Part shown: one piece after another, positions 22,492-64,000 of the stretch | Layout of the letters: the number at the start of each line of letters is the position of its first letter | How positions within the stretch are numbered: position 1 is the stretch's first letter | Assembly: GCF_032444005.1 (NCBI RefSeq) | Contig: NC_091289.1 | Span: 63,116,001-63,180,000, forward strand | Reading direction: 5' to 3' | DNA length: 64,000 nt | From: Ranitomeya imitator | Lineage: Eukaryota | Notes under the pieces: model-generated | The model's database searches: none | Told to the model about the DNA's origin: nothing | Seen by the model: the letters and a program-made list of their open reading frames with translations, nothing else | Program-made: the position numbers and the translations under genes

Positions 22492-23137
22492 GATGTCCCA
22501 GATGTGCTCAATAGGATTCTGGTCTGAGGAATGGGTGCGCCAGTACATAGCTTCAATGCCTTAATCTTGCAGGAACTGCTGACACACTCCAGCCACATGA
22601 GATCTGGCATTGTCCTGCATTAGGAGGAACCCAGGGCCAACCGCACCAGCATATGGTCTCACAAAGGGTCTGAGGATCTCATCTTGGTACCTAATGGCAG
22701 TCCGGCTACCTCTGGCAAGCACATGGAGGGCTGTACGGCCCTCCAAAGGAATGCCACCCCACATCATTACTGACCTCACATGTGCTCAGTGTGAACCTGC
22801 TTTCATCTATGAAGAGCACAGTGCGCCAGTGGCGAATTTGTCAATCCTGGTGTTCTGTGGCAAATGCCAAGCATCCTGCACGGTGTTGGGCTGTGAGCAC
22901 AACCCAAATCTGTGGACGTCGGGCGCGCAGACCATCCTCATGGAGTCGGTTTCTAACTCTTTGTGCAGACACATGCACATTTGTGGCCTGCTGGAGGTCA
23001 TTTTGCAGGGCTCTGGCAGTGCTCCTCATGTTCCTCCTTGCACAAAGGAGGTTGTTGCCCTCCTACGGCCCCCTCCATATCTCCTGGTGTACTCGCCTGT
23101 CTCCTGGTAGCGCCTCCAGCCTGTGGACACTACACTG

Positions 23138-32248: not shown

Positions 32249-32568
32249 TTACACAAACACGGCCTCCCTATGGATTAATATAACATTTAATAGTTCTGCT
32301 CCTTCTGTTCTGTAAATTACGGGCCATCGTGGAGTTAGCGGTGACCATACGGGGGTATATACACATTCTGAATGCCAGAATCTGGAGGTGTATATACACC
32401 GTACGCTCACCGTCAGTTTTCTGATAACCTACTGGTGTGACCGGCCTGGGGCCTTCTCCATTGATTGTCAGCCAATTCTGTCCGGACTATAGGGGGCAGC
32501 AGAGAGCGGGTGGTACTCGCGACCTTCCCGGCCTGGGGGGATTTGTGCGATTAAGAAATTCTTGGCAA

Positions 32569-33051
32569 ATTCGCATAGTGGGCATCCCTGAAAAAGCTGA
32601 AGGGAGGAATCCAACGGAATATATTGAAAAATGGCTGTTAGAGACATTTGGAGATATGGCGCTAACAAAAGTGTTCGCGGTAGAAAGAGCGCATAGGGTC
32701 CCGCCGAAACCACCTGTCCCTGGAGCGAATCCCCGTACCATGCTCGCCAAAATTCTAAACTATAGAGACAGAGACATTATCCTGAGGAAGGCCAGAGACA
32801 TGACGGATCTGACAGTTGAAGGTCAAAAGATTGCTATCTACCCAGACTATTCTACTCTGGTGCAGAAACAACGGATGATGTTCACGGGTATCAAGAGACG
32901 GCTGAGGGAATTGGGTGTGCAGTATTCCATGATGTTCCCAGCAAGACTGAGGGTGGTGGCGTTTGATAAAATTCATTTTTTCCAGAAGCCGGAGGACGCT
33001 ACCCAGTGGATCGATATTAATGCTAAAAAGCTTAAAGGAAAAGGAGACTGA
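32569..33051 (+). CDS. L1 ORF1 C-terminal part (RRM and CTD), 5'-truncated
   Basis: IRIVGIPE, VERAHRV, PRTMLAK, IAIYPDYS and MMFPARLRV are L1 ORF1 motifs. Confidence 0.9.
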   Translation: MRIVGIPEKAEGRNPTEYIEKWLLETFGDMALTKVFAVERAHRVPPKPPVPGANPRTMLAKILNYRDRDIILRKARDMTDLTVEGQKIAIYPDYSTLVQKQRMMFTGIKRRLRELGVQYSMMFPARLRVVAFDKIHFFQKPEDATQWIDINAKKLKGKGD

Positions 33052-33514
33052 AACTGTGGGAAGAGTCTGAAGTTGTTTACTTATCTGTCAGTTGGAAAAG
33101 AGTCATGTGATTGACAAGCCAAGGGGTATGGGGGGGGAAGAAGGGAGCTGGATTATATCCAGTTAAAGTTAAAGGGATGATGTAATGGTTGCTGGGAAAG
33201 GGGGAGGAAGGGTTTGCAACATATTTTAAGTGTATGCAGGCTTCTTGTGTGTGCAAATAATTCTAAGTTAAAATGTTTTGAGAACGTTATTTTTCAAAAT
33301 GTCTGAAATCCTGTTATGTACAGTGGTGGGAGGAGGGTTGGGAAGGTAATGCCAAACGGAGTGTTCGCTATGGGCGATGATGCCCCACTCTTGGAAAGAG
33401 GTGGAATGGTTAGATGTGAGGGGGGAAGGGTGGGAGGGGGAGTTGGGAGGGGGGGGGGGGGGGGGAGGGTAGTTAGACAGCCTGAGCTCAAAATTGATGA
33501 TACTTATAGTGAAG

Positions 33515-36500
33515 ATGAGCCAAGTGATGGGGACCCGTTTTAAGATTTTGTGCTGGAATGTGAGAGGCCTAGGGGAGAAATCTAGACGTGCTGCGTGTTT
33601 GCAATATGCAAGAGACCAAAGGGCCTCAATGATATGCTTGCTGGAGACGCATTTGGTAAGGGAAAAAGTGGATGTTTTGAATAGACGATGGATCCAGAGG
33701 GGATATCATTCTACCTTCTCCACGTATGCAAGAGGAGTCTCAATCTTGGTTCCAGCGGGAGTTCAGTATGAGAAGGTGAAGGTATATGTGGACGTGGAGG
33801 GACAGTATGTACTATTACGGTGTATACTGTATGGAGTGATGCTGTGTGTTGCCGCGATGTATATTCCGCCTCCCTACTCTAGCAGGAAGATTAGAGAAGT
33901 AATGGAGCGAGTGGAAAAATGGGGACCGACACCGTTAATAATTATCGGAGATCTAAATAACATCTGTGATGAATATTGGGATAAAAATAAAAATACTCAG
34001 AATAGGTCGGAGGGACACATAACAACATTTGGCACCTATATACAGGAGATAGGTTTGATTGATCTGTGGAGGGTTAGACATGTGGGGGAGAGAGGGTACT
34101 CATGTTATTCACCGGCACATGCCACACTCTCTAGAATCGATATGGCTCTGGGTAACAGGATCTTGGACACACTGGTTGGGGAGGTGAGATATCTGCCAAG
34201 GGCCTTGTCGGACCATAGTCCAATTGAAGTAGAGGTTAGATTGGAGGGGGCTCGCTCGCTAAGTGGGAGAGAATGGAAGATTCATCCTAATTGGTTACAG
34301 AGTATTGAGTTGGAAAGTATAGGACGGGAGGTGGCGGAATTCTTTCTCTTAAATGATGGAAGCGCCGACGCTCTTACAATTTGGGATGCAATGAAGGCGT
34401 ACCTGAGGGGACTACTATTTAGGGACATTAGTAGGTGTAAGCGGAGGACGAGAGAGGTAGAAAAAGCGGCAGTTGAGGAGTTGAAGGAAGCAGAGGATGG
34501 GATGGCCACACTGGGAACCCCTGAGGCAGAGAGAAGAATGAAAAACGCACAAAATCATTTGGAAAAAATTCTGCTAGGCAAAGCTGAGAGGAAACGAGAT
34601 TTCCAAAGGGTATTGTTCTATCAGGAGGGAGAAACAGTGGGACATATGCTGTCGGTAGTGGCTGCTGCTCAGAGAGGTTCTTCATATATACACTCTTTGG
34701 ATTCTGCTAGTGGAGGTAAAATAACGGAAACACCTGAAATTTTGAGAGCCTTTGCGGACTTCTATGCAGATTTGTATTCCTCTCGGGTTGGTGAATCGGT
34801 CGAGGATGCACTGACTTTCTTGGAAGGTCTGGATTTGCCGAGACTGAGTGAGGCAGATAGGGAGAGCCTTGAGGCCCCTATCACTGAGGAGGAATTGAGT
34901 CGGGCATTGATGTCTATGGCCAATGGGAAGGCGCCTGGGGTCGATGGGTTACCCGCTGAGATCTATAAAGGGTTGGCAGAAGTGTTGATTCCTAGATTAA
35001 AAATGGTATTGGAGGAAGCTAGGTCTTGTGGGCGCTTGCCAGCCTCTATGAGAGAGGCCATAATAGTGGTCATTCCAAAGGAGGATAAGGACTTGGGGAA
35101 ACCGGAGTCGTACCGCCCAATTTCTTTACTAACAATTGATGTCAAGCTTCTGGCCAAGGTGTTGGCTCTCCGCCTCTCTAGTGTTATTGCGAGTCTGGTG
35201 CATTCGGACCAATCTGGCTTTATGCCGGATAGATCAACGGCGATCAATTTGCGGAGGTTATATGTAAATTTGCAGGTAGAGTCTGATAACTGTGGTCGAA
35301 GAGTGATTGTATCGCTAGATGCACACAAGGCGTTTGACAGCGTCGAATGGGGGTACCTCTGGCAGGTGCTGGAATGTATGGGGTTTGGCCCGCAGTTTGT
35401 GGCCTGGATACAGCTGTTGTACTCATTACCATCCGCCAGAATTAGAGTAAATGGGGAGCTATCTCGTCCTATAGGGCTGGCTAGGGGTACTAGGCAGGGA
35501 TGCCCGCTGTCACCCCTCCTGTTCGCGTTGGCTGTAGAACCTCTTGCTGCTAAGATTCGGCAGTCGGATGGGGTCCCTGGGTTTAGGTATGGCAAAGTAG
35601 AGGAAAAAATAGCGTTCTATGCGGATGATGTTTTGCTGTTCCTGGAGGATCCAGACAATTCACTAAGAGGGGCCGTTGAAATTGTTGAGAGATTTGGTAC
35701 TGTGTCGGGACTAACAATTAATTGGGATAAGACGGTTCTTTTTAGAGTGGATGACGTAGGAGAGAATGTGAGTGAGGATGTTGGGGATGAGAGGCTGAAG
35801 GTGGTTTCCCAATTTAAATATCTTGGAATATGGATTTCGGTGCCGGTGGCGGAGTTTCTGCAAAGAAATTTGACTCCTGTTATGGGGGTACTCAAGGCAA
35901 AGGTAGAAGCCTGGAATAAGCTACATCTATCGGTCGTCGGTAGGGTAAACCTTATTAAAATGGTCCTTATGCCCAAAATTCTTTATGTTCTGCATAACGC
36001 ACCAATTTGGATCCCTCGGGGGAAGTTCAGGCAGATTAATGCCCTCTTTAGAAGTTTGATATGGGGTAGACAATATCCACGTATTAGCTTGGAGACGCTT
36101 CAACGACCCAAGGAAGATGGTGGTTTGGCTTTGCCCAACCCGGAAATATACTTCCTTGCGGCCCAGGGCCAGCATTTGAAGGGCTGGGCGCGAGGGGCGT
36201 CATCCAGTGCAGTACAACAGCTATTGGAAGAGGTGACGGACCGACGACCGATGGCCAGGTGTTTGGAGGATGGCTCATTGGGCGCGCTGGGGAAAATATA
36301 CCCAACCCTGTTCCTGATTCGTAAATTATGGAATAGACTAAGGCAGATTCGTGGGGTTACAGGGTTGACTAAATTCACACCGATATGGTCTAACCACAAC
36401 TTAAAGGATTTTGAGGCCCTGGGAGGATTGATGGAATGGCAGAATAAGGGAATTTGCTTTGTTCACCAGATAATCCAGCAGCAGGAGCTGAAGTCCTTTT

Positions 36501-37279
36501 CCCAATTGCAGGAAGAATTTGGTTTGCGATCCACAGGGGAATATCAGTATGCGCAGATGAGACATGCCTTTAGAGCTCAGAATAAGAAGGCTGATATCAG
36601 GGTTCAAGATGATATAGTGTTGGAGTATGTGTGTGGTGAGGGTACTACAAGGGGAGTTATTTCCACTCTGTATAAGGACCTTATGCACACATTTCTGCTA
36701 GATTTCCCTATAAAGGCGAGAGCTAAGTGGGAGAGAGAAGTGGGGCCGATGGAAAATGAAACCTGGGAATCGGTGATGGAGTGGGTTCCGCGACTATCCT
36801 TGAGTGAACCATATAGGCTCTCGCAGCTATACATTTTGCATAGGGTATATAAATCTCCAGAAGTGCTATACAAAGCAGGATTGCGTGCCAATTCTGGGTG
36901 TCCGAGGTGTGCGAGTGAGAAGGCAGGAATATATCACATGATGTGGACGTGTCCGAGACTGGCTGCCTTTTGGGTGGTGGTTTTGAGCCGAGTTGAAGCA
37001 GCGTATAAGTGCAGAGTTGTTAGAGACCCGATAGTATGTGTGCTGGGATATGTGGAAGAAATTGGAGTTGACAATACTTGGAAGATTGCAATTGCTAGGC
37101 TACTCTACATGGCCAGGAAAGTAATAGCACGAAACTGGATAAACGCGGAACCACCTGTGAGAAGGGAATTTCTCCAATATGTTCAACATGGTCTAAAATT
37201 GGAAAAGGGGGTGTACAGTAAAAGGGGGAAAATAGAACTCTTTAATAAAATATGGTCTCCTTGGCTTGATTTGGATTGA
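33515..37279 (+). CDS. L1 ORF2 (APE endonuclease, reverse transcriptase, cysteine-rich C-terminus), uninterrupted, 1254 aa from the ATG at 33515
   Basis: WNVRGL, LLETH, GDLN, SRID, SDHSP, YRPISLL, RQGCPLSP, FYADD, CPRC...H...C, all in one frame. Confidence 0.97.
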   Translation: MSQVMGTRFKILCWNVRGLGEKSRRAACLQYARDQRASMICLLETHLVREKVDVLNRRWIQRGYHSTFSTYARGVSILVPAGVQYEKVKVYVDVEGQYVLLRCILYGVMLCVAAMYIPPPYSSRKIREVMERVEKWGPTPLIIIGDLNNICDEYWDKNKNTQNRSEGHITTFGTYIQEIGLIDLWRVRHVGERGYSCYSPAHATLSRIDMALGNRILDTLVGEVRYLPRALSDHSPIEVEVRLEGARSLSGREWKIHPNWLQSIELESIGREVAEFFLLNDGSADALTIWDAMKAYLRGLLFRDISRCKRRTREVEKAAVEELKEAEDGMATLGTPEAERRMKNAQNHLEKILLGKAERKRDFQRVLFYQEGETVGHMLSVVAAAQRGSSYIHSLDSASGGKITETPEILRAFADFYADLYSSRVGESVEDALTFLEGLDLPRLSEADRESLEAPITEEELSRALMSMANGKAPGVDGLPAEIYKGLAEVLIPRLKMVLEEARSCGRLPASMREAIIVVIPKEDKDLGKPESYRPISLLTIDVKLLAKVLALRLSSVIASLVHSDQSGFMPDRSTAINLRRLYVNLQVESDNCGRRVIVSLDAHKAFDSVEWGYLWQVLECMGFGPQFVAWIQLLYSLPSARIRVNGELSRPIGLARGTRQGCPLSPLLFALAVEPLAAKIRQSDGVPGFRYGKVEEKIAFYADDVLLFLEDPDNSLRGAVEIVERFGTVSGLTINWDKTVLFRVDDVGENVSEDVGDERLKVVSQFKYLGIWISVPVAEFLQRNLTPVMGVLKAKVEAWNKLHLSVVGRVNLIKMVLMPKILYVLHNAPIWIPRGKFRQINALFRSLIWGRQYPRISLETLQRPKEDGGLALPNPEIYFLAAQGQHLKGWARGASSSAVQQLLEEVTDRRPMARCLEDGSLGALGKIYPTLFLIRKLWNRLRQIRGVTGLTKFTPIWSNHNLKDFEALGGLMEWQNKGICFVHQIIQQQELKSFSQLQEEFGLRSTGEYQYAQMRHAFRAQNKKADIRVQDDIVLEYVCGEGTTRGVISTLYKDLMHTFLLDFPIKARAKWEREVGPMENETWESVMEWVPRLSLSEPYRLSQLYILHRVYKSPEVLYKAGLRANSGCPRCASEKAGIYHMMWTCPRLAAFWVVVLSRVEAAYKCRVVRDPIVCVLGYVEEIGVDNTWKIAIARLLYMARKVIARNWINAEPPVRREFLQYVQHGLKLEKGVYSKRGKIELFNKIWSPWLDLD

Positions 37280-58554: not shown

Positions 58555-59060
58555 CAGTCTAAAGAAATGCATTTTTTAGGCCATGCTTAAAACTGTGGGT
58601 ATTATTGAATTGAATATATTGAATTGTCCAGGGTAGTGCATTCCAGACATCTGGCGCAGCACTTGAGAAGTCTTGGAGAGTGGAGTGGGAGATTTGGATT
58701 ATTGAGTATCTTAGTCTTAGGTCAGTCGCGGAATGGAGGGCATGGGTAAGGTGGTAGATACAGATGAGGGAGTAGGTGTAGGGTGGTGCTGCACTTTGGA
58801 GTGCTTTGTGGGTGAGAGTGATGAATTCATATTGGACCTTGCAGTGGATGGGTAACCAGCGCAATGTCTGCACAGGGTAGTGACGTCGGTTTAGTGGTTC
58901 AAAGAAATATGATTCTGGCTGCTGCATTCGGGATGGATTAGAGAGGGGAGAATTTAGTAAGAGGGAGACCGATTAGTAGAGAGTTACAAATTCCAGACGA
59001 AGGATAATAAGAGCAACAGTCAATTTTTGCAGTCGGAGGTAAGAAAAGGTCGAATTCTAC
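58555..59060 (-). mobile_element. Old L2 ORF2 C-terminal fragment
   Basis: LRWLPI, LTHKAL, QDFSSAAPDVWNALP and FKHGLK motifs. Confidence 0.8.
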
Positions 59061-59403: not shown

Positions 59404-60339
59404 TGTTGTGAATTCTGTTATCGAACTCCCTCCTGTGGTCATGAATGGTACTTCGGCGAGTTCTGTCCATGGATTCCCTCTGGTGGCTGTGAGTGGAGCT
59501 GCTGCTTCTGAGGTTCCTTCCACAGGTGACGTAGTTTATTCTTTGGCTGGCTGCTCTATTTAACTCCACTCAGATCGTTACTCCATGCCAGCTGTCAATG
59601 TTCTTGTACTGGTTCAGTTCGCTCTTGGATCTGTCGGGTGTCCTGTCTACTCCAGCAGAAGCTAAGTCCCTGCTAGTTTATTATTTGTTCTTTGTTTTCT
59701 TGTCCAGCTTTGCTATCATGATTTTGCTTTGCTAGCTGGAAGCTCTGGGATGCAGAGTGGCACCTCCGCACCGTGAGTCGGTGCGGAGGTCTTTTTGCAC
59801 ACTCTGCGTGGTCTTTTTGTAGTTTTTTGTGCTGACCGCAAAGTTACCTTTCCTATCCTCTGTCTGTTTAGTAAGTCTGGCCTCCCTTTGCTGAAACCTG
59901 TTTCATTTCTGTGTTTGTGACTTTCATCTTAACTCACAGTCAATATATGTGGGGGGCTGCCTTTTTCTTTGGGGAATTTCTCTGAGGCAAGGTAGGCTTT
60001 ATTTTCTATCTCTAGGGCTAGTTAGCTCTTAGGCTGTGAAGAGGCGTCTAGGGAGTGTCAGGAACGCTCCACGGCTATTTCTAGTGTGTGTGACAGGATT
60101 AGGGGTTGCGGTCAGCAGAGCTCCCACTTCCCAGAGCTTGTCCTTTGTTGGTTTAACCATCAGGTCTTTTCGGGTGCTCCTAACCACCAGGTCATAACAG
60201 TACAGCTGGCCCAAAGTATTAATGCATCTCAATAGAGGGATAAGAGAAGTTCTGAGACCATTTTTTTTTCTCTGCAGTGTTTTGTCTTTCTTTTCCCCTT
60301 AACCTCTGGGTGGTTCAGGACACAGGTGTAGATATGGAC
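59404..60339 (+). mobile_element. 5' LTR (59404-60199), PBS/leader and probable gag start, truncated at the L2 tail
   Basis: TG...CA LTR homologous to 21689-22491, followed by non-flank sequence with a self-complementary PBS and ATGGACATT at 60334. Confidence 0.82.
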
Positions 60340-63300
60340 ATTATTATTATTATTATTATTATTTATTATTATAGCGCCATTTATTCCATGGCGCTTTACA
60401 TGTGAGGAGGGGTATACATAATAAAACAAGTACAATAATCTTGAAAAATACAAGTCACAACTGGTACAGGAGGAGAGAGGACCCTGCCCGCGAGGGCTCA
60501 CAATCTACAAGGGATGGGTGAGGATACAGTAGGTGAGGGTAGAGCTGGCCGTGCAGCGGTTTGGTCAATCGGTGGTTACTGCAGGTTGTAGGCTTGTCGG
60601 AAGAGGTGAGTCTTCAGGTTCTTTTTGAAGGTTTCGATGGTAGGCGAGAGTCTGATATGTTGTGGTAGAGCATTCCAGAGTAGGGGGGATGCACGAGAGA
60701 AATCTTGTATGCGATTGTGGGAAGAGGAGATAATAGGGGAGTAGAGAAGGAGATCTTGTGAGGATCGGAGGTTGCGTGCAGGAAAGTACCGGGAGACGAG
60801 GTCACAGATGTATGGAGGAGACAGGTTGTGGATGGCTTTATATGTCATGGTTAGGCTTTTGTACTGGAGTCTCTGGGTGATGGGGAGCCAGTGCAGGGAT
60901 TGACAGAGGGGAGAGGCCGGGGAATAGCGGGGGGACAGGTGGATTAGTCGGGCAGCAGAGTTTAGAATAGATTGGAGGGGTGCAAGAGTGTTAGAGGGGA
61001 GGCCACAGAGCAGGAGGTTACAGTAGTCAAGGCGAGAGATGATGAGGGCATGGACTAGGGTTTTTGCAGATTCTTGGTTTAGGAATGTGCGGATCCGTGA
61101 AATATTTTTGAGTTGGAGGCGGCAGGAAGTGGAAAGGGTTTGGATATGTGGTTTAAAGGAGAGATCAGTGTCAAGGATTACCCCAAGACAGCGGGCTTGT
61201 GGGACTGGGGAGAGTGGGCAGCCGTTTACTGTAATGGATAGGTTCGTTGGGGAGATCGCGTGAGATGGGGGAAAGATGATGAATTCTGTTTTGTCCATGT
61301 TAAGTTTTAGAAATCTAGTGGAGAAGAAGGATGAAATAGCAGACAGACATTGAGGGATTCTGGTTAGTAGGGAGGTGATATCTGGTCCAGAGATGTAGAT
61401 CTGTGTGTCGTCAGCATAGAGATGATACTGAAAGCCGTGAGATTCTATGAGCTGTCCCAGGCCAAAGGTGTAGATGGAGAAGAGCAGGGGTCGTAGAACT
61501 GAACCTTGCGGGACTCCGACAGATAGGGGGCGAGGTGAGGAGGTGGTGTGTGAGTGGGAGACGCTGAATGTACGGTCAGTTAGGTATGATGAGATCCAGG
61601 ATAGGGCCAATTCTGTGATGCCAAGGGATGAGAGGGTCTGCAGCAGCAGGGAATGGTCCACTGTGTCAAAGGCAGAGGACAGGTCCAGGAGGAGGAGGAC
61701 AGAGTAGTGTCGCTTGCTCTTGGCGGTTAATAGGTCATTGGTGACCTTAGTTAGGGCAGTTTCAGTGGAGTGGTGTGACCGGAAGCCTGATTGAAAGCGG
61801 TCGAAGAAGGAGCAGGAAGATAGATGGGAGGACAGTTCAATATGGACATGTTGTTCCAGTAGTTTTGAGGCAAAGGGGAGAAGTGATATAGGGCGATAGC
61901 TAGATACAGAGGATTCAAGAGAGGGCTTTTTGAGGATAGGTGTGATTGTGGCATGTTTAAAGCTTGAGGGGAAAATGCCAGTTGTTAGTGATAGGTTAAA
62001 GAGATGGGTTAGGGTTGGGATGAAGACTGTGGTGAGGTTTGGGATGAAGTGGGATGGGAGTGGGTCAAGTGCACAGGTGGTGAGATGCGATCTTGAGAGT
62101 AGAGTGGAGAGTCCGTCTTCTGTAATGGTGGAGAAGTTGGTTTTGGAGGTGGAGGGCTGGGTAGTTGGGAGGAAGGGTTCTGGGGGTTGTTTACTAAAAT
62201 TGTCTCTGATGTTCTCAATTTTCTGCTTGAAAAATGAGGCGAAGTCTTCAGCTGAGATGAGTGGGGAGGGAGGAGGTGCTGGGGGACGGAGGAGAGAGTT
62301 GAAGGTGTTGAATAACTGTTTGGGGTTGTGAGACAGGGAGGATATGAGAGATGAGAAGTAGGTTTGTTTTGCTGTGGCGAGCATGGTTTTGAAAGCAGTG
62401 AGGGACTGTTTGAATGCGATGAAATGCTCGATGGAGTGGGATCTTTTCCATCTGCGCTCAGCAGCTCTGGAAGCTCGCCTCAGTTCTTTTGTCATGCTGG
62501 TGTGCCAGGGTTGTCTGTTGATTTTGCGAGCTTTGGTATGTGTGAGAGGGGCAAGAGATTCCAAAGCTGCAGCTATTGTGGTGTTATATAGAGCGGCAGC
62601 ATCATCCGCATTGTGTAGGGAGCTTATGTCTGTGAGAGGGAGGAGGGATTCAGAGAGTGAGTGAAGATCAAGGTGTTTAAGATTTCTGCGAGGGTGTGAG
62701 AGTTTGTGGGGTGGGGGTTGTAGACAAGGAGTGGAAAGGGAAGAGAATGTAAGTAGGTTGTGGTCAGAAAGAGGAAGAGGTGAGTTTGAGAGGTTAGATA
62801 GGGAGCAGAGGCGGGTGAGAATGAGGTCCAGTGTGTGACCATCTTTGTGGGTGGCTGTAGAAGACCATTGAGTGAGGCCAAAGGAGGAAGTGAGAGATAG
62901 AAGTTTAGTGGCAGCTGAGAGGGAAGTGTCAATGGGGATGTTGAAGTCGCCCATGATGATAGTGGGGATGTCGGCGGCGAGGAAGTGGAGTAGCCAGGTG
63001 GTGAAGTGGTCGAAGAAGGTGGTGGCTGGCCCTGGGGGACGGTAGATGACAGCCAGTTGGAGGTTGGAGGGGGAGTAGATGCGCACAGAGTGCACCTCAA
63101 AGGAAGGGAGGATAACAGAGGGTGGCAGTGGGATTGGGGTGAAGGAGCAGTTATCTGACAGGAGAAAACCAACTCCTCCGCCATGCTTGCTGCTGGGGCG
63201 GGGTGTGTGAGAAAGGTGGAAGCCACCGTAAGAGAGTGCCGCAGGGGAGGCTGTGTCAGAAGGGGTGAGCCAGGTTTCAGTGATGCCGAGGAAGGAGAGT

Positions 63301-63850
63301 TTGTTATTGATAAAGAGGTCATGGATAAATGGAAGTTTATTGCAGACAGAGCGTGCGTTCCATAGTGCTCCAGATAGGGAAATTGGGGGAGTGGGGGCAG
63401 GATGAATGGGTATGAGGTTACTGTGGTTGCGAGGACGTGTAGAGGATCGTGGCAGGGGATTAGAAATGAGTGTGGGGATGTGATGAGGAGGGCCAGGATT
63501 TGGGGATATGTCGCCAGCAATGAGGAGCAGCAGACAGAGCGTTAGAAGGTGTGAGCTGGATAGGTCATGATGTGGCCGTGTGTGCCTGGCGAGAAAGGAT
63601 TGTATGTGGAGGAATAGTTCTGTGGAGGAGGTGAGATGACTGGGGAGGATGGAGGGAGAAATGACTAGTTCTTTACTGGGTGGAGGGACTACAGGAGATA
63701 GGAAGAAATAGAGTAGTATGGGGGTGAATGTGAAAAGAAACCGAAACATTATAGTGGTTTTCTATTCCTTTACCTTCCAGTCAATTCCAGTCCAATTCTA
63801 GTCTAATTCATAGCAATTAAAAAACTGCAATTTAAAAATGCAATTTCTAA
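60340..63850 (-). mobile_element. Young L2 LINE lacking ORF1 (5' boundary approximate)
   Basis: (AAT)n tail 60340-60372, 3' stem-loop 60373-60395 and an uninterrupted ORF2. Confidence 0.93.
60576..63749 (-). CDS. L2 ORF2, 1057 aa: hydrophobic leader, 2A-like motif, APE endonuclease, reverse transcriptase
   Basis: [76 protein letters not shown] and [10 protein letters not shown]. Confidence 0.96.
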
Positions 63851-64000
63851 GATGGTCAGACACGTCTGGTCAGACTCATGGCTATGAATTTATGGGCACC
63901 TAAGGGCTCACAGCTGAGAGGGAGGATGTGGGCGTGTGTGTCTAGAGCACATGTTCACAGTTAAGCCAGGTCATAAAGAGGGGGTGGGGTAGATGGCCAC

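What the first reader, a model, noticed from the sequence alone, without database searches (positions are those of the whole stretch)
63489..63749. 2A-like ribosomal StopGo motif behind a signal-peptide-like leader in L2 ORF2
Residues ~60-87 ([27 protein letters not shown]|P) have the Leu-rich helix plus D-x-x-x-NPGP layout of viral 2A peptides and sit just before the endonuclease. 2A-like motifs are known in L2/CR1-group retrotransposons, but DISPNPGP departs from D(V/I)ExNPGP, so skipping efficiency is uncertain. The ORF also opens with a hydrophobic stretch ([19 protein letters not shown]). Inference: skipping would release an 86-aa, possibly ER-targeted peptide and a free EN-RT, while read-through would route ORF2p to the secretory pathway, giving a translational switch on retrotransposition.
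Basis: partly seen in the sequence, partly recalled or inferred. Interest (0 to 1): 0.72.

Follow-up and report, generated by a model that had tools for sequence, protein, structure and literature searches.

The report
Conserved 2A-like leader of frog L2
An intact frog L2 jumping gene starts its only protein with a greasy signal-like tip and a virus-style "2A" peptide; both are conserved and selected, although the 2A carries a serine that abolished skipping when tested in other 2A sequences.

Summary
Window 63489-63749 (minus strand) encodes residues 1-87 of an intact 1057-aa endonuclease/reverse-transcriptase ORF (60576-63749). It belongs to a single-ORF, probably L2-clade LINE, most likely from Ranitomeya imitator. 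Residues 64-87 form a Leu-rich 2A-like peptide ending in GDISPNPG|P.

The motif is not a chance match (2.5e-5 expected per ORF). It sits at the same place in copies from four frog families and in a second, unidentified lineage. Its codons differ synonymously between copies. For the 2A segment, window versus Dendrobates gives dN/dS 0.07 (11 synonymous, 3 non-synonymous changes).

2A-like peptides in L2/CR1 LINEs are already published (Odon 2013). That paper, and later mutational scans, found Glu-to-Ser variants inactive. In this clade Ser or Ala at that position is the conserved state, which argues for retained function, probably stalling or partial StopGo that throttles ORF2p.

The hydrophobic N-terminus is also conserved in character. 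It starts right after the stop-ATG in every copy that keeps its initiator, and is among the three most hydrophobic segments (first or second in three of four). Whether it targets the ER is untested, and the frog copies lack a good signal-peptidase site.

The scan noted the same feature on another copy in this genome (s1-295126).

The parts
63750..64000 (-). Partial 5' UTR of the element, cut by the window edge. 63794-64000 is one copy of a ~207-bp unit that is repeated in a tandem array upstream of the ORF in a second copy (L001). It holds four short uORFs.
60576..63749 (-). Intact single ORF of 1057 aa (leader, APE endonuclease, reverse transcriptase). The only Met before residue 266 is Met1.
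63687..63749 (-). Residues 1-21: N-terminal hydrophobic, signal-peptide-like segment. It starts directly after the stop-ATG.
63645..63662 (-). Residues 30-35 (ISPSIL): short (I/L)SPSL motif. It is shared by all frog leaders and also appears (SLSPSL) in the second lineage; that correspondence is by eye.
63489..63560 (-). Residues 64-87: Leu-rich 2A-like (StopGo-type) peptide ending GDISPNPG|P. The putative skip site lies between Gly86 (63492-63494) and Pro87 (63489-63491). Position p14 is Ser82 instead of Glu.
63375..63488 (-). Residues 88-125: Pro/Ser-rich linker between the 2A-like peptide and the endonuclease.
62745..63374 (-). APE-type endonuclease domain (about residues 126-335; Pfam match 142-330).
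61206..61931 (-). Reverse-transcriptase domain (Pfam RVT_1, residues 607-848).
60340..60575 (-). 3' UTR ending in an (AAT)n tail at about 60340-60372.

Best explanation
Residues 1-125 are the conserved leader module of an intact, recently active, single-ORF L2-type LINE. The module has three parts: an N-terminal hydrophobic segment, a short (I/L)SPSL motif, and a Leu-rich 2A-like peptide (GDISPNPG|P). Met1 is the only start codon upstream of the endonuclease, so every ribosome that makes EN-RT must translate this peptide. The most likely mechanism is that the nascent Leu-rich helix plus the GD(V/I)xxNPGP core acts inside the ribosomal exit tunnel as a stall or partial StopGo element. That would detach the ~86-aa leader from some chains, abort or slow others, and so limit how much EN-RT an ORF1-less element produces. 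On this view Ser at p14 tunes the activity rather than abolishing it. Shown here: homology, position, purifying selection at the peptide level, obligatory passage, and the absence of ORF1 in related copies. Inferred: that the motif still stalls or skips, and that the result is down-regulation.
For: The same motif lies at the same place in Dendrobates, Phyllobates, Gastrophryne and Leptobrachium copies, and in unidentified 3.7-6 kb single-ORF contigs. The motif codons differ synonymously between lineages: Gly GGC/GGT/GGA, Asp GAC/GAT, Ile ATA/ATC/ATT, Ser TCC/TCT/AGT. Nei-Gojobori dN/dS for window versus Dendrobates is 0.07 for the 2A segment (11 synonymous and 3 non-synonymous changes, Fisher p=2.6e-5). 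The leader flanks give 0.27-0.34 and the endonuclease 0.11. In 19 distinct Leu-rich contexts among relatives, D, V/I and PGP are invariant, Gly precedes D in all but one, and Asn is His once. Only p14 varies: S 9, A 4, H 3, E 2, Q 1. Met occurs only at residues 1, 266 and later. There is no ORF1 upstream in L001 or L006-L008. Published work supports the mechanism: 2A-like peptides in L2/CR1 ORF2 correlate with loss of ORF1 and were proposed as down-regulators (PMC3708506, PMC3894237), and Leu-rich 2A-likes of ORF2p often lower protein abundance (bioRxiv 10.64898/2026.06.17.732966).
Against: Two natural Glu-to-Ser non-LTR 2A-likes were inactive in reticulocyte lysate (PMC3708506). In deep mutational scans of the FMDV (F2A) and porcine teschovirus (P2A) 2A peptides, no E14 substitution except His was tolerated (bioRxiv 10.64898/2026.09.24.754024). 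In viral proteomes p14 is almost only Glu, rarely His (PMC12846837). No activity assay exists for this peptide. The dN/dS rests on one pairwise comparison of 24 codons, and the partner copy (L003) is decayed further downstream.
Confidence: 0.5

Rival explanations
1. The N-terminal segment is a real ER signal or anchor that brings the ribosome and L2 mRNA to the ER. StopGo at Gly86/Pro87 then releases the leader into the ER and frees EN-RT on the cytosolic side, while read-through chains are routed to the secretory pathway.
For: In the window, L001, L003, L004 and L006-L008 a hydrophobic segment of about 15 residues follows the stop-ATG directly. It ranks among the top three hydrophobic 12-mers in the four frog proteins checked. 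In 7 of 35 full-leader homologues the global hydrophobic maximum lies in the first 20 residues (binomial P=4e-6). In the second lineage the segment ends in a conserved S-x-A | x-R pattern that fits the -3/-1 signal-peptidase rule in 7 of 8 sequences. Its dN/dS is 0.27. A precedent exists in sea-urchin NLR 2A-like sequences, which act both as signal and as recoding element (PMC4981915).
Against: No signal-peptide predictor was available. The frog copies lack a usable cleavage site (Ser18-Pro19) and have a weak n-region. The whole protein is 47% Leu/Ser/Pro/Thr, so hydrophobic runs arise easily. Many relatives have the signal-like tip but no 2A, and this model would send their EN-RT to the wrong compartment. 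Skipping is doubtful for a p14 Ser. Signal-bearing upstream sequences can inhibit 2A (PMC2978324). No paper in the library links L2 ORF2 to the ER.
Confidence: 0.2
2. The motif is dead for recoding. The leader, including the GDISPNPGP segment, is simply an N-terminal extension of ORF2p, kept for some other peptide-level role such as a hydrophobic helix pair used for membrane, partner or RNP contacts.
For: Published Glu-to-Ser variants are inactive (PMC3708506; bioRxiv 10.64898/2026.09.24.754024). The leader as a whole is under moderate constraint, not only the core. AlphaFold places helices at 2-20, 40-56 and 65-77, at low confidence.
Against: It is hard to explain why exactly the residues needed for StopGo (G, D, V/I, N, P, G, P) stay invariant across lineages with p14 E/Q/H/A/S if the ribosomal function is gone. 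The two lineages with canonical Glu have the same architecture.
Confidence: 0.22
3. The motif is a chance match or a decaying relic with no function.
For: NPGP alone occurs at about the chance rate in the window. Odon et al. regarded mutated motifs as possible decay products.
Against: About 2.5e-5 are expected per ORF. The motif sits at a homologous position in many lineages, and dN/dS is 0.07 with many synonymous changes.
Confidence: 0.03

Closest known systems
2A-like sequences of L2/CR1/Rex1/Crack/Ingi non-LTR retrotransposons (Odon et al. 2013, PMC3708506), including an L2-clade element of Xenopus tropicalis and sea-urchin STR-51/69
   Same: APE-type EN-RT ORF. A Leu-rich 2A-like peptide lies 40-80 residues from the N-terminus of ORF2. 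There is no ORF1. The host is a frog.
   Different: Here p14 is Ser. This report adds evidence of purifying selection on that variant and of a conserved signal-like N-terminus upstream. Neither is described in that paper.
Nematostella Glu-to-Ser 2A-likes (CR1-2_NV, Crack-3_NVe, L2A-1_NVe)
   Same: The same substitution at the key Glu of the core motif.
   Different: Crack-3_NVe and L2A-1_NVe were tested and were inactive. They belong to other clades and have other upstream contexts, and L2A-1_NVe lies in ORF1. The frog peptide has not been tested.
Sea-urchin NLR '2A-like signal sequences' (Roulston et al. 2016, PMC4981915)
   Same: A signal-type hydrophobic sequence combined with an NPGP recoding core, giving two possible fates for the downstream protein.
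   Different: There the 26-aa 2A-like sequence is itself the N-terminal signal. Here a separate hydrophobic N-terminus lies about 50 residues upstream of the 2A-like peptide, and the cargo is a retrotransposon enzyme.
'Leucine stall-helix' / reduction-class eukaryotic 2A-like peptides (bioRxiv 10.64898/2026.06.17.732966)
   Same: A poly-Leu helix at -19 to -10 in front of a GDxExNPGP-like core, in the N-terminus of ORF2p-like proteins.
   Different: That study defines the core with Glu. Whether Ser variants fall in the skipping, reduction or inactive class could not be looked up, because no supplementary tables are held.
L1Tc 2A of Trypanosoma cruzi (Heras et al. 2006, cited in PMC3708506)
   Same: A single-ORF APE-type element with an N-terminal 2A, and natural core-motif variants with graded activity.
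   Different: Ingi clade, canonical DIEQNPGP, and no signal-like tip has been reported.

Membership tests
2A / StopGo recoding peptide | Core octapeptide D(V/I)ExNPGP (expanded form: (D/G/C/N)(V/I)ExNPGP, rarely His at p14) | tested here: not met
   DISPNPGP matches 7 of 8 positions. p14 is Ser82, not Glu or His (motif definition from PMC12846837).
2A / StopGo recoding peptide | Gly before Asp and a suitable upstream context (Leu-rich, 'LLLLSG-like' class, helical) | tested here: met
   The context is [13 protein letters not shown]. It is the most hydrophobic 12-mer of the protein. AlphaFold predicts a helix at 65-77, at low confidence.
2A / StopGo recoding peptide | Demonstrated skipping of the Gly-Pro bond | not testable with these tools
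   This needs a reporter assay. Published Glu-to-Ser variants were inactive (PMC3708506).
2A-like-bearing APE-type non-LTR retrotransposons (Odon 2013) | APE endonuclease plus RT in one ORF, with the 2A-like peptide 40-80 aa from its N-terminus | tested here: met
   Pfam finds EN at 142-330 and RT at 607-848. The core lies at residues 80-87.
2A-like-bearing APE-type non-LTR retrotransposons (Odon 2013) | No ORF1 upstream (true of most members) | tested here: met
   In L001 only tandem repeats lie upstream. L006-L008 have 420-800 bp of 5' UTR and a single ORF. The window itself shows only 251 bp upstream.
2A-like-bearing APE-type non-LTR retrotransposons (Odon 2013) | Motif homologous and positionally conserved among related elements | tested here: met
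L2 clade of LINEs | RT groups with reference L2 elements in a phylogeny | not tested
   No reference LINE library was available. The indirect support is that the best non-frog named hits are from platypus and teleosts. That these genomes are L2-rich is from memory.
L2 clade of LINEs | L2-type 3' end (conserved 3' UTR core, short tandem-repeat tail) | tested here: inconclusive
   An (AAT)n tail is present, and a 3' UTR stretch resembles the L2/MIR 3' core as I recall it. No Rfam 3'-element match was found.
Cleavable ER signal peptide | Hydrophobic h-region of about 7-15 residues within the first ~25 residues | tested here: met
   Residues 4-17 are uncharged and hydrophobic (KD12 2.05, rank 2 of the protein). 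This is conserved in character in relatives.
Cleavable ER signal peptide | Small uncharged residues at -3/-1 and no Pro at -1/+1 | tested here: not met
   In the frog copies the segment is followed by Ser-Pro or Ile-Pro. The rule is met in the second lineage (S-x-A | x-R).
Cleavable ER signal peptide | Predictor score or experimental translocation | not testable with these tools
   No SignalP, Phobius or DeepTMHMM is available here.
N-terminal '2A-like signal sequence' (SpNLR type) | The 2A-like peptide itself forms the extreme N-terminus and serves as the signal | tested here: not met
   The 2A-like peptide lies at residues 64-87, and a separate hydrophobic segment occupies residues 1-21.

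The most novel reading that the evidence does not exclude
Single-ORF L2 LINEs carry an ancient three-part leader: a signal peptide, an (I/L)SPSL peptide, and a Leu-rich 2A whose p14 is Ser or Ala. The leader docks the translating L2 mRNA at the ER and then frees EN-RT by StopGo. This would mean that Ser/Ala at the 'essential' Glu position is active in the Leu-rich context, contrary to mutagenesis of viral 2As. It would also mean that ER-localised translation stands in for the missing ORF1.
Probability: 0.12. Interest if true: 0.8.

Novelty: new variant of a known kind. Interest (0 to 1): 0.5.

Why it matters
2A-like peptides in LINEs have been known since 2006-2013, so the motif alone is ordinary. 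Two results here go beyond what the papers I could read describe.

First, the Ser/Ala variants at the Glu position, which experiments call dead, are the conserved and selected state in two lineages of this clade. Either the rule for 2A activity depends on context, or the motif has a ribosomal role other than skipping. Both options can be tested with a simple reporter.

Second, a signal-peptide-like tip is a conserved partner of the 2A in ORF1-less L2 elements. This raises the question of where these elements translate their enzyme and what the released ~86-aa peptide does.

The window copy is intact, and a 99.7%-identical sister copy exists, so the element is young enough for functional work.

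Tried and rejected
- **Bare NPGP pattern:** it is not significant in the window, and the second hit at 22628 has no 2A context.
- **ESM Atlas look-alikes of the leader:** the best score was 0.85, all hits were unnamed, and nothing useful came out.
- **Rfam scan of the element, including its 3' end:** the only hit was a chance snoRNA match at E=0.87. No LINE 3'-element family matched.
- **AlphaFold on the five-sequence leader alignment:** mean pLDDT was 55, so it serves only as a weak indication of helices.
- **Supplementary tables of the high-throughput 2A studies:** none are held, so I could not look up whether DISPNPGP-type peptides were assayed. A full-text search for DISPNPGP found no paper.
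- **Cluster look-up to name the taxa of the second lineage:** it returned no names.
- **Same locus as L001:** rejected. The 3' flank differs, and L001 carries a frameshift in the endonuclease.
- **Internal Met as a route to EN-RT that bypasses the leader:** rejected. The next Met is residue 266, inside the endonuclease.
- **Phyllobates annotated start (P0006):** it is not the ancestral start. The hydrophobic segment is still in frame upstream, but its initiator is lost.
- **Large representative-protein search:** not used, because no claim here rests on an absence of relatives.
- **Operators' rules:** I handled no contig that I take for human and filled no N runs.

Full report
**What is there**

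The finding's coordinates are exact. On the minus strand an ATG at 63749 opens a 1057-aa ORF that ends at 60576. An in-frame stop lies five codons upstream of the ATG. Pfam finds an APE-type endonuclease at residues 142-330 and a reverse transcriptase at 607-848.

The element continues through a 3' UTR to an (AAT)n tail at about 60340. Its 5' UTR runs off the window at 64000. The closest database protein is 99% identical and comes from Ranitomeya imitator. Other close relatives come from Dendrobates, Phyllobates, Leptobrachium and Gastrophryne. The window is therefore from a dendrobatid frog, most likely R. imitator.

**More than chance**

NPGP alone is not remarkable: 2 DNA matches were found against 1.13 expected. 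The second match, at 22628, has no 2A context. D[VI]xxNPGP, however, occurs only once in all six frames of the window. About 2.5e-5 such matches are expected in an ORF of this composition, and far fewer with the preceding Gly and Leu run. Homology settles the question, as described next.

**Related copies**

- **L001 (R. imitator):** a second copy, 99.7% identical over 3.57 kb. It has an identical leader, a frameshift in the endonuclease and a different 3' flank. The family was therefore active recently.
- **Upstream of the L001 ORF:** there are only tandem repeats, made of 72-bp units and a ~207-bp unit. The last copy of the 207-bp unit corresponds to window 63794-64000. No ORF1 is present.
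- **Other frogs:** copies from Dendrobates tinctorius (L003), Gastrophryne carolinensis (L004, intact 1069-aa ORF) and Phyllobates terribilis (L002), plus the Leptobrachium protein P0001, all carry the leader.
- **Unidentified samples:** contigs of 3.7-6 kb (L006-L008 and proteins P0121-P0125) are single-ORF elements with 420-800 bp of 5' UTR and the same layout.

**The 2A-like peptide is selected as a peptide**

Across the five frog sequences, SHLL, the Leu run, G, D, I and NPGP are invariant, while the rest of the leader is only 40-70% identical. The codons of the invariant residues differ synonymously between lineages. Examples are Gly GGC/GGT/GGA, Asp GAC/GAT, Ile ATA/ATC/ATT, and Ser TCC/TCT in frogs but AGT in L008.

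Nei-Gojobori estimates for window versus L003 are:

| Segment | Residues | dN/dS |
|---|---|---|
| Hydrophobic tip | 1-20 | 0.27 |
| First linker | 21-63 | 0.30 |
| 2A segment | 64-87 | 0.07 |
| Second linker | 88-125 | 0.34 |
| Endonuclease | 126-335 | 0.11 |

The 2A segment has 11 synonymous and 3 non-synonymous differences (Fisher p=2.6e-5). L003 is a decayed copy, so these values are, if anything, too high.

**The odd residue**

The canonical core is D(V/I)ExNPGP, and here Glu is replaced by Ser. The published evidence on that position is as follows:

- Odon et al. describe 2A-like peptides at exactly this position in L2, CR1, Rex1, Crack and Ingi elements, including an L2-clade element of Xenopus tropicalis. 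They note that most such elements lack ORF1.
- They also list natural Glu-to-Ser variants in Nematostella, and found the two they tested inactive (PMC3708506).
- A 2026 mutational scan of the FMDV (F2A) and porcine teschovirus (P2A) 2A peptides found no tolerated substitution of this Glu except His (bioRxiv 10.64898/2026.09.24.754024).
- A survey of viral proteomes found almost only Glu, and rarely His, at p14 (PMC12846837).

Set against this, the relatives of this ORF show 19 distinct Leu-rich 2A-like contexts. Their p14 residue is S in 9, A in 4, H in 3, E in 2 and Q in 1. D, V/I and PGP are invariant; Gly precedes D in all but one, and Asn is His in one. In the second lineage all eight sequences have Ala or Ser at p14.

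A motif that had lost its function should not keep precisely the StopGo residues for this long. I therefore conclude that the Ser/Ala forms still do something at the ribosome. That is an inference, not a measurement.

**The signal-like tip**

In the window, L001, L003, L004 and L006-L008, the ORF begins with a stop, then ATG, then about 15 hydrophobic residues. In Phyllobates the segment is still in frame but the initiator has been lost.

In the window protein the two most hydrophobic 12-mers out of 1046 are the 2A helix (residues 68-79) and the tip (residues 10-21). The tip ranks second in P0001, first in L003 and third in L004. Among 35 homologues with a complete leader, 7 have their global hydrophobic maximum within the first 20 residues (binomial P=4e-6). 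Fifteen have a strongly hydrophobic tip, including 7 of the 11 that carry a 2A-like motif.

In the second lineage the tip ends in a conserved S-x-A | x-R pattern that fits the -3/-1 signal-peptidase rule. The frog tips end in Ser-Pro or Ile-Pro, which does not fit the rule.

There are several caveats:
- The protein is 47% Leu/Ser/Pro/Thr, so hydrophobic runs arise easily.
- No signal-peptide predictor was available.
- Many relatives have the tip without any 2A. In those, it is followed by a basic RG-rich motif.

I found no paper that links an L2 ORF2 leader to a signal peptide. This covers only the library that was searched.

**How it most likely works**

Met1 is the only Met before residue 266, which lies inside the endonuclease. 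All EN-RT must therefore be translated through the leader. The best-supported reading (about 0.5) is that the Leu-rich helix and the core motif act in the exit tunnel as a stall or partial StopGo element. That would limit EN-RT output and may release the ~86-aa leader.

This agrees with the down-regulation argument made for ORF1-less elements (PMC3894237). It also agrees with the 'leucine stall-helix' class reported for ORF2p 2A-likes (bioRxiv 10.64898/2026.06.17.732966).

It has a published analogue (PMC4981915) and one known complication: signal-bearing upstream sequences can inhibit 2A (PMC2978324). A recoding-dead leader retained for another role stands at about 0.2. Chance or a decaying relic is practically excluded.

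**Comparison and verdict**

As a 2A-like peptide in an L2-type LINE of a frog, this is a new member of a published class. As a strict 2A it fails the core-motif test at one position.

Two points go beyond the papers I could read:
- evidence that the 'inactive' Ser/Ala form is maintained by selection;
- the conserved pairing of the 2A with a signal-like tip.

The L2 assignment itself is probable but not formally tested, because no reference library was available and Rfam gave no 3'-element match.

The scan's notes list the same feature on another piece of this genome (s1-295126). I handled no contig that I take for human and filled no masked stretch. I built no consensus of the whole element; the only consensus lines are those the alignment tool printed for the leader segments.

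Noticed in passing
window 32437-37279 (+): A second, unrelated LINE with two intact ORFs. One is a 204-aa ORF1-like protein and the other a 1261-aa EN-RT ORF whose RT is 29% identical to the L2 ORF. By eye it looks like an L1-type element.
   Followed up: partly
L001 22032-27573; window 63794-64000: The 5' UTR of this L2 family is a long composite tandem array of 72-bp units interleaved with a ~207-bp unit, repeated at least 7 times. It recalls the monomer promoters of mouse L1. The window shows only the last unit.
   Followed up: partly
window 63375-63749 versus 60576-63374, compared with L003: Synonymous divergence between the window copy and the Dendrobates copy is about 0.79 in the leader but 0.22-0.29 in the EN and post-EN regions. 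This suggests that the 5' module has a different history (exchange between subfamilies) or a higher mutation rate.
   Followed up: no
proteins P0029-P0033, P0042, P0049, P0082, P0084: Relatives without a 2A-like motif also begin with a signal-peptide-like segment. It is followed by a conserved Y(T/S)RxxLL motif and a basic RG-rich motif (such as RRGxRGGR) before the endonuclease.
   Followed up: no
L001 21653-22029 and 31143 onward: The same 55-bp tandem repeat lies both upstream of the 5' array and at the point where the L001 copy's 3' UTR breaks off. That copy therefore sits in, or is interrupted by, a satellite.
   Followed up: no
window 58574-58873 (-): A fragment encoding a C-terminal stretch 44% identical to residues 949-1046 of the ORF. 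It is probably the remnant of an older relative of the same LINE group.
   Followed up: no
window 60000-64000: There is strong strand asymmetry: GC skew is +0.42 to +0.52 on the plus strand, so the coding strand is pyrimidine- and C-rich. This gives a protein with 15.6% Leu, 14.1% Ser, 8.9% Pro, 8.6% Thr and only 6 Met.
   Followed up: partly
alignment A2 (P0021, P0121-P0125, P0040, P0035), leader residues ~25-70: The second lineage keeps a highly conserved SLSPSLNTLPALHICCNRKLLPLP block, with an invariant Cys and a nearly invariant Cys pair, between the signal-like tip and the 2A. This would suit a released, possibly lumenal, peptide.
   Followed up: no
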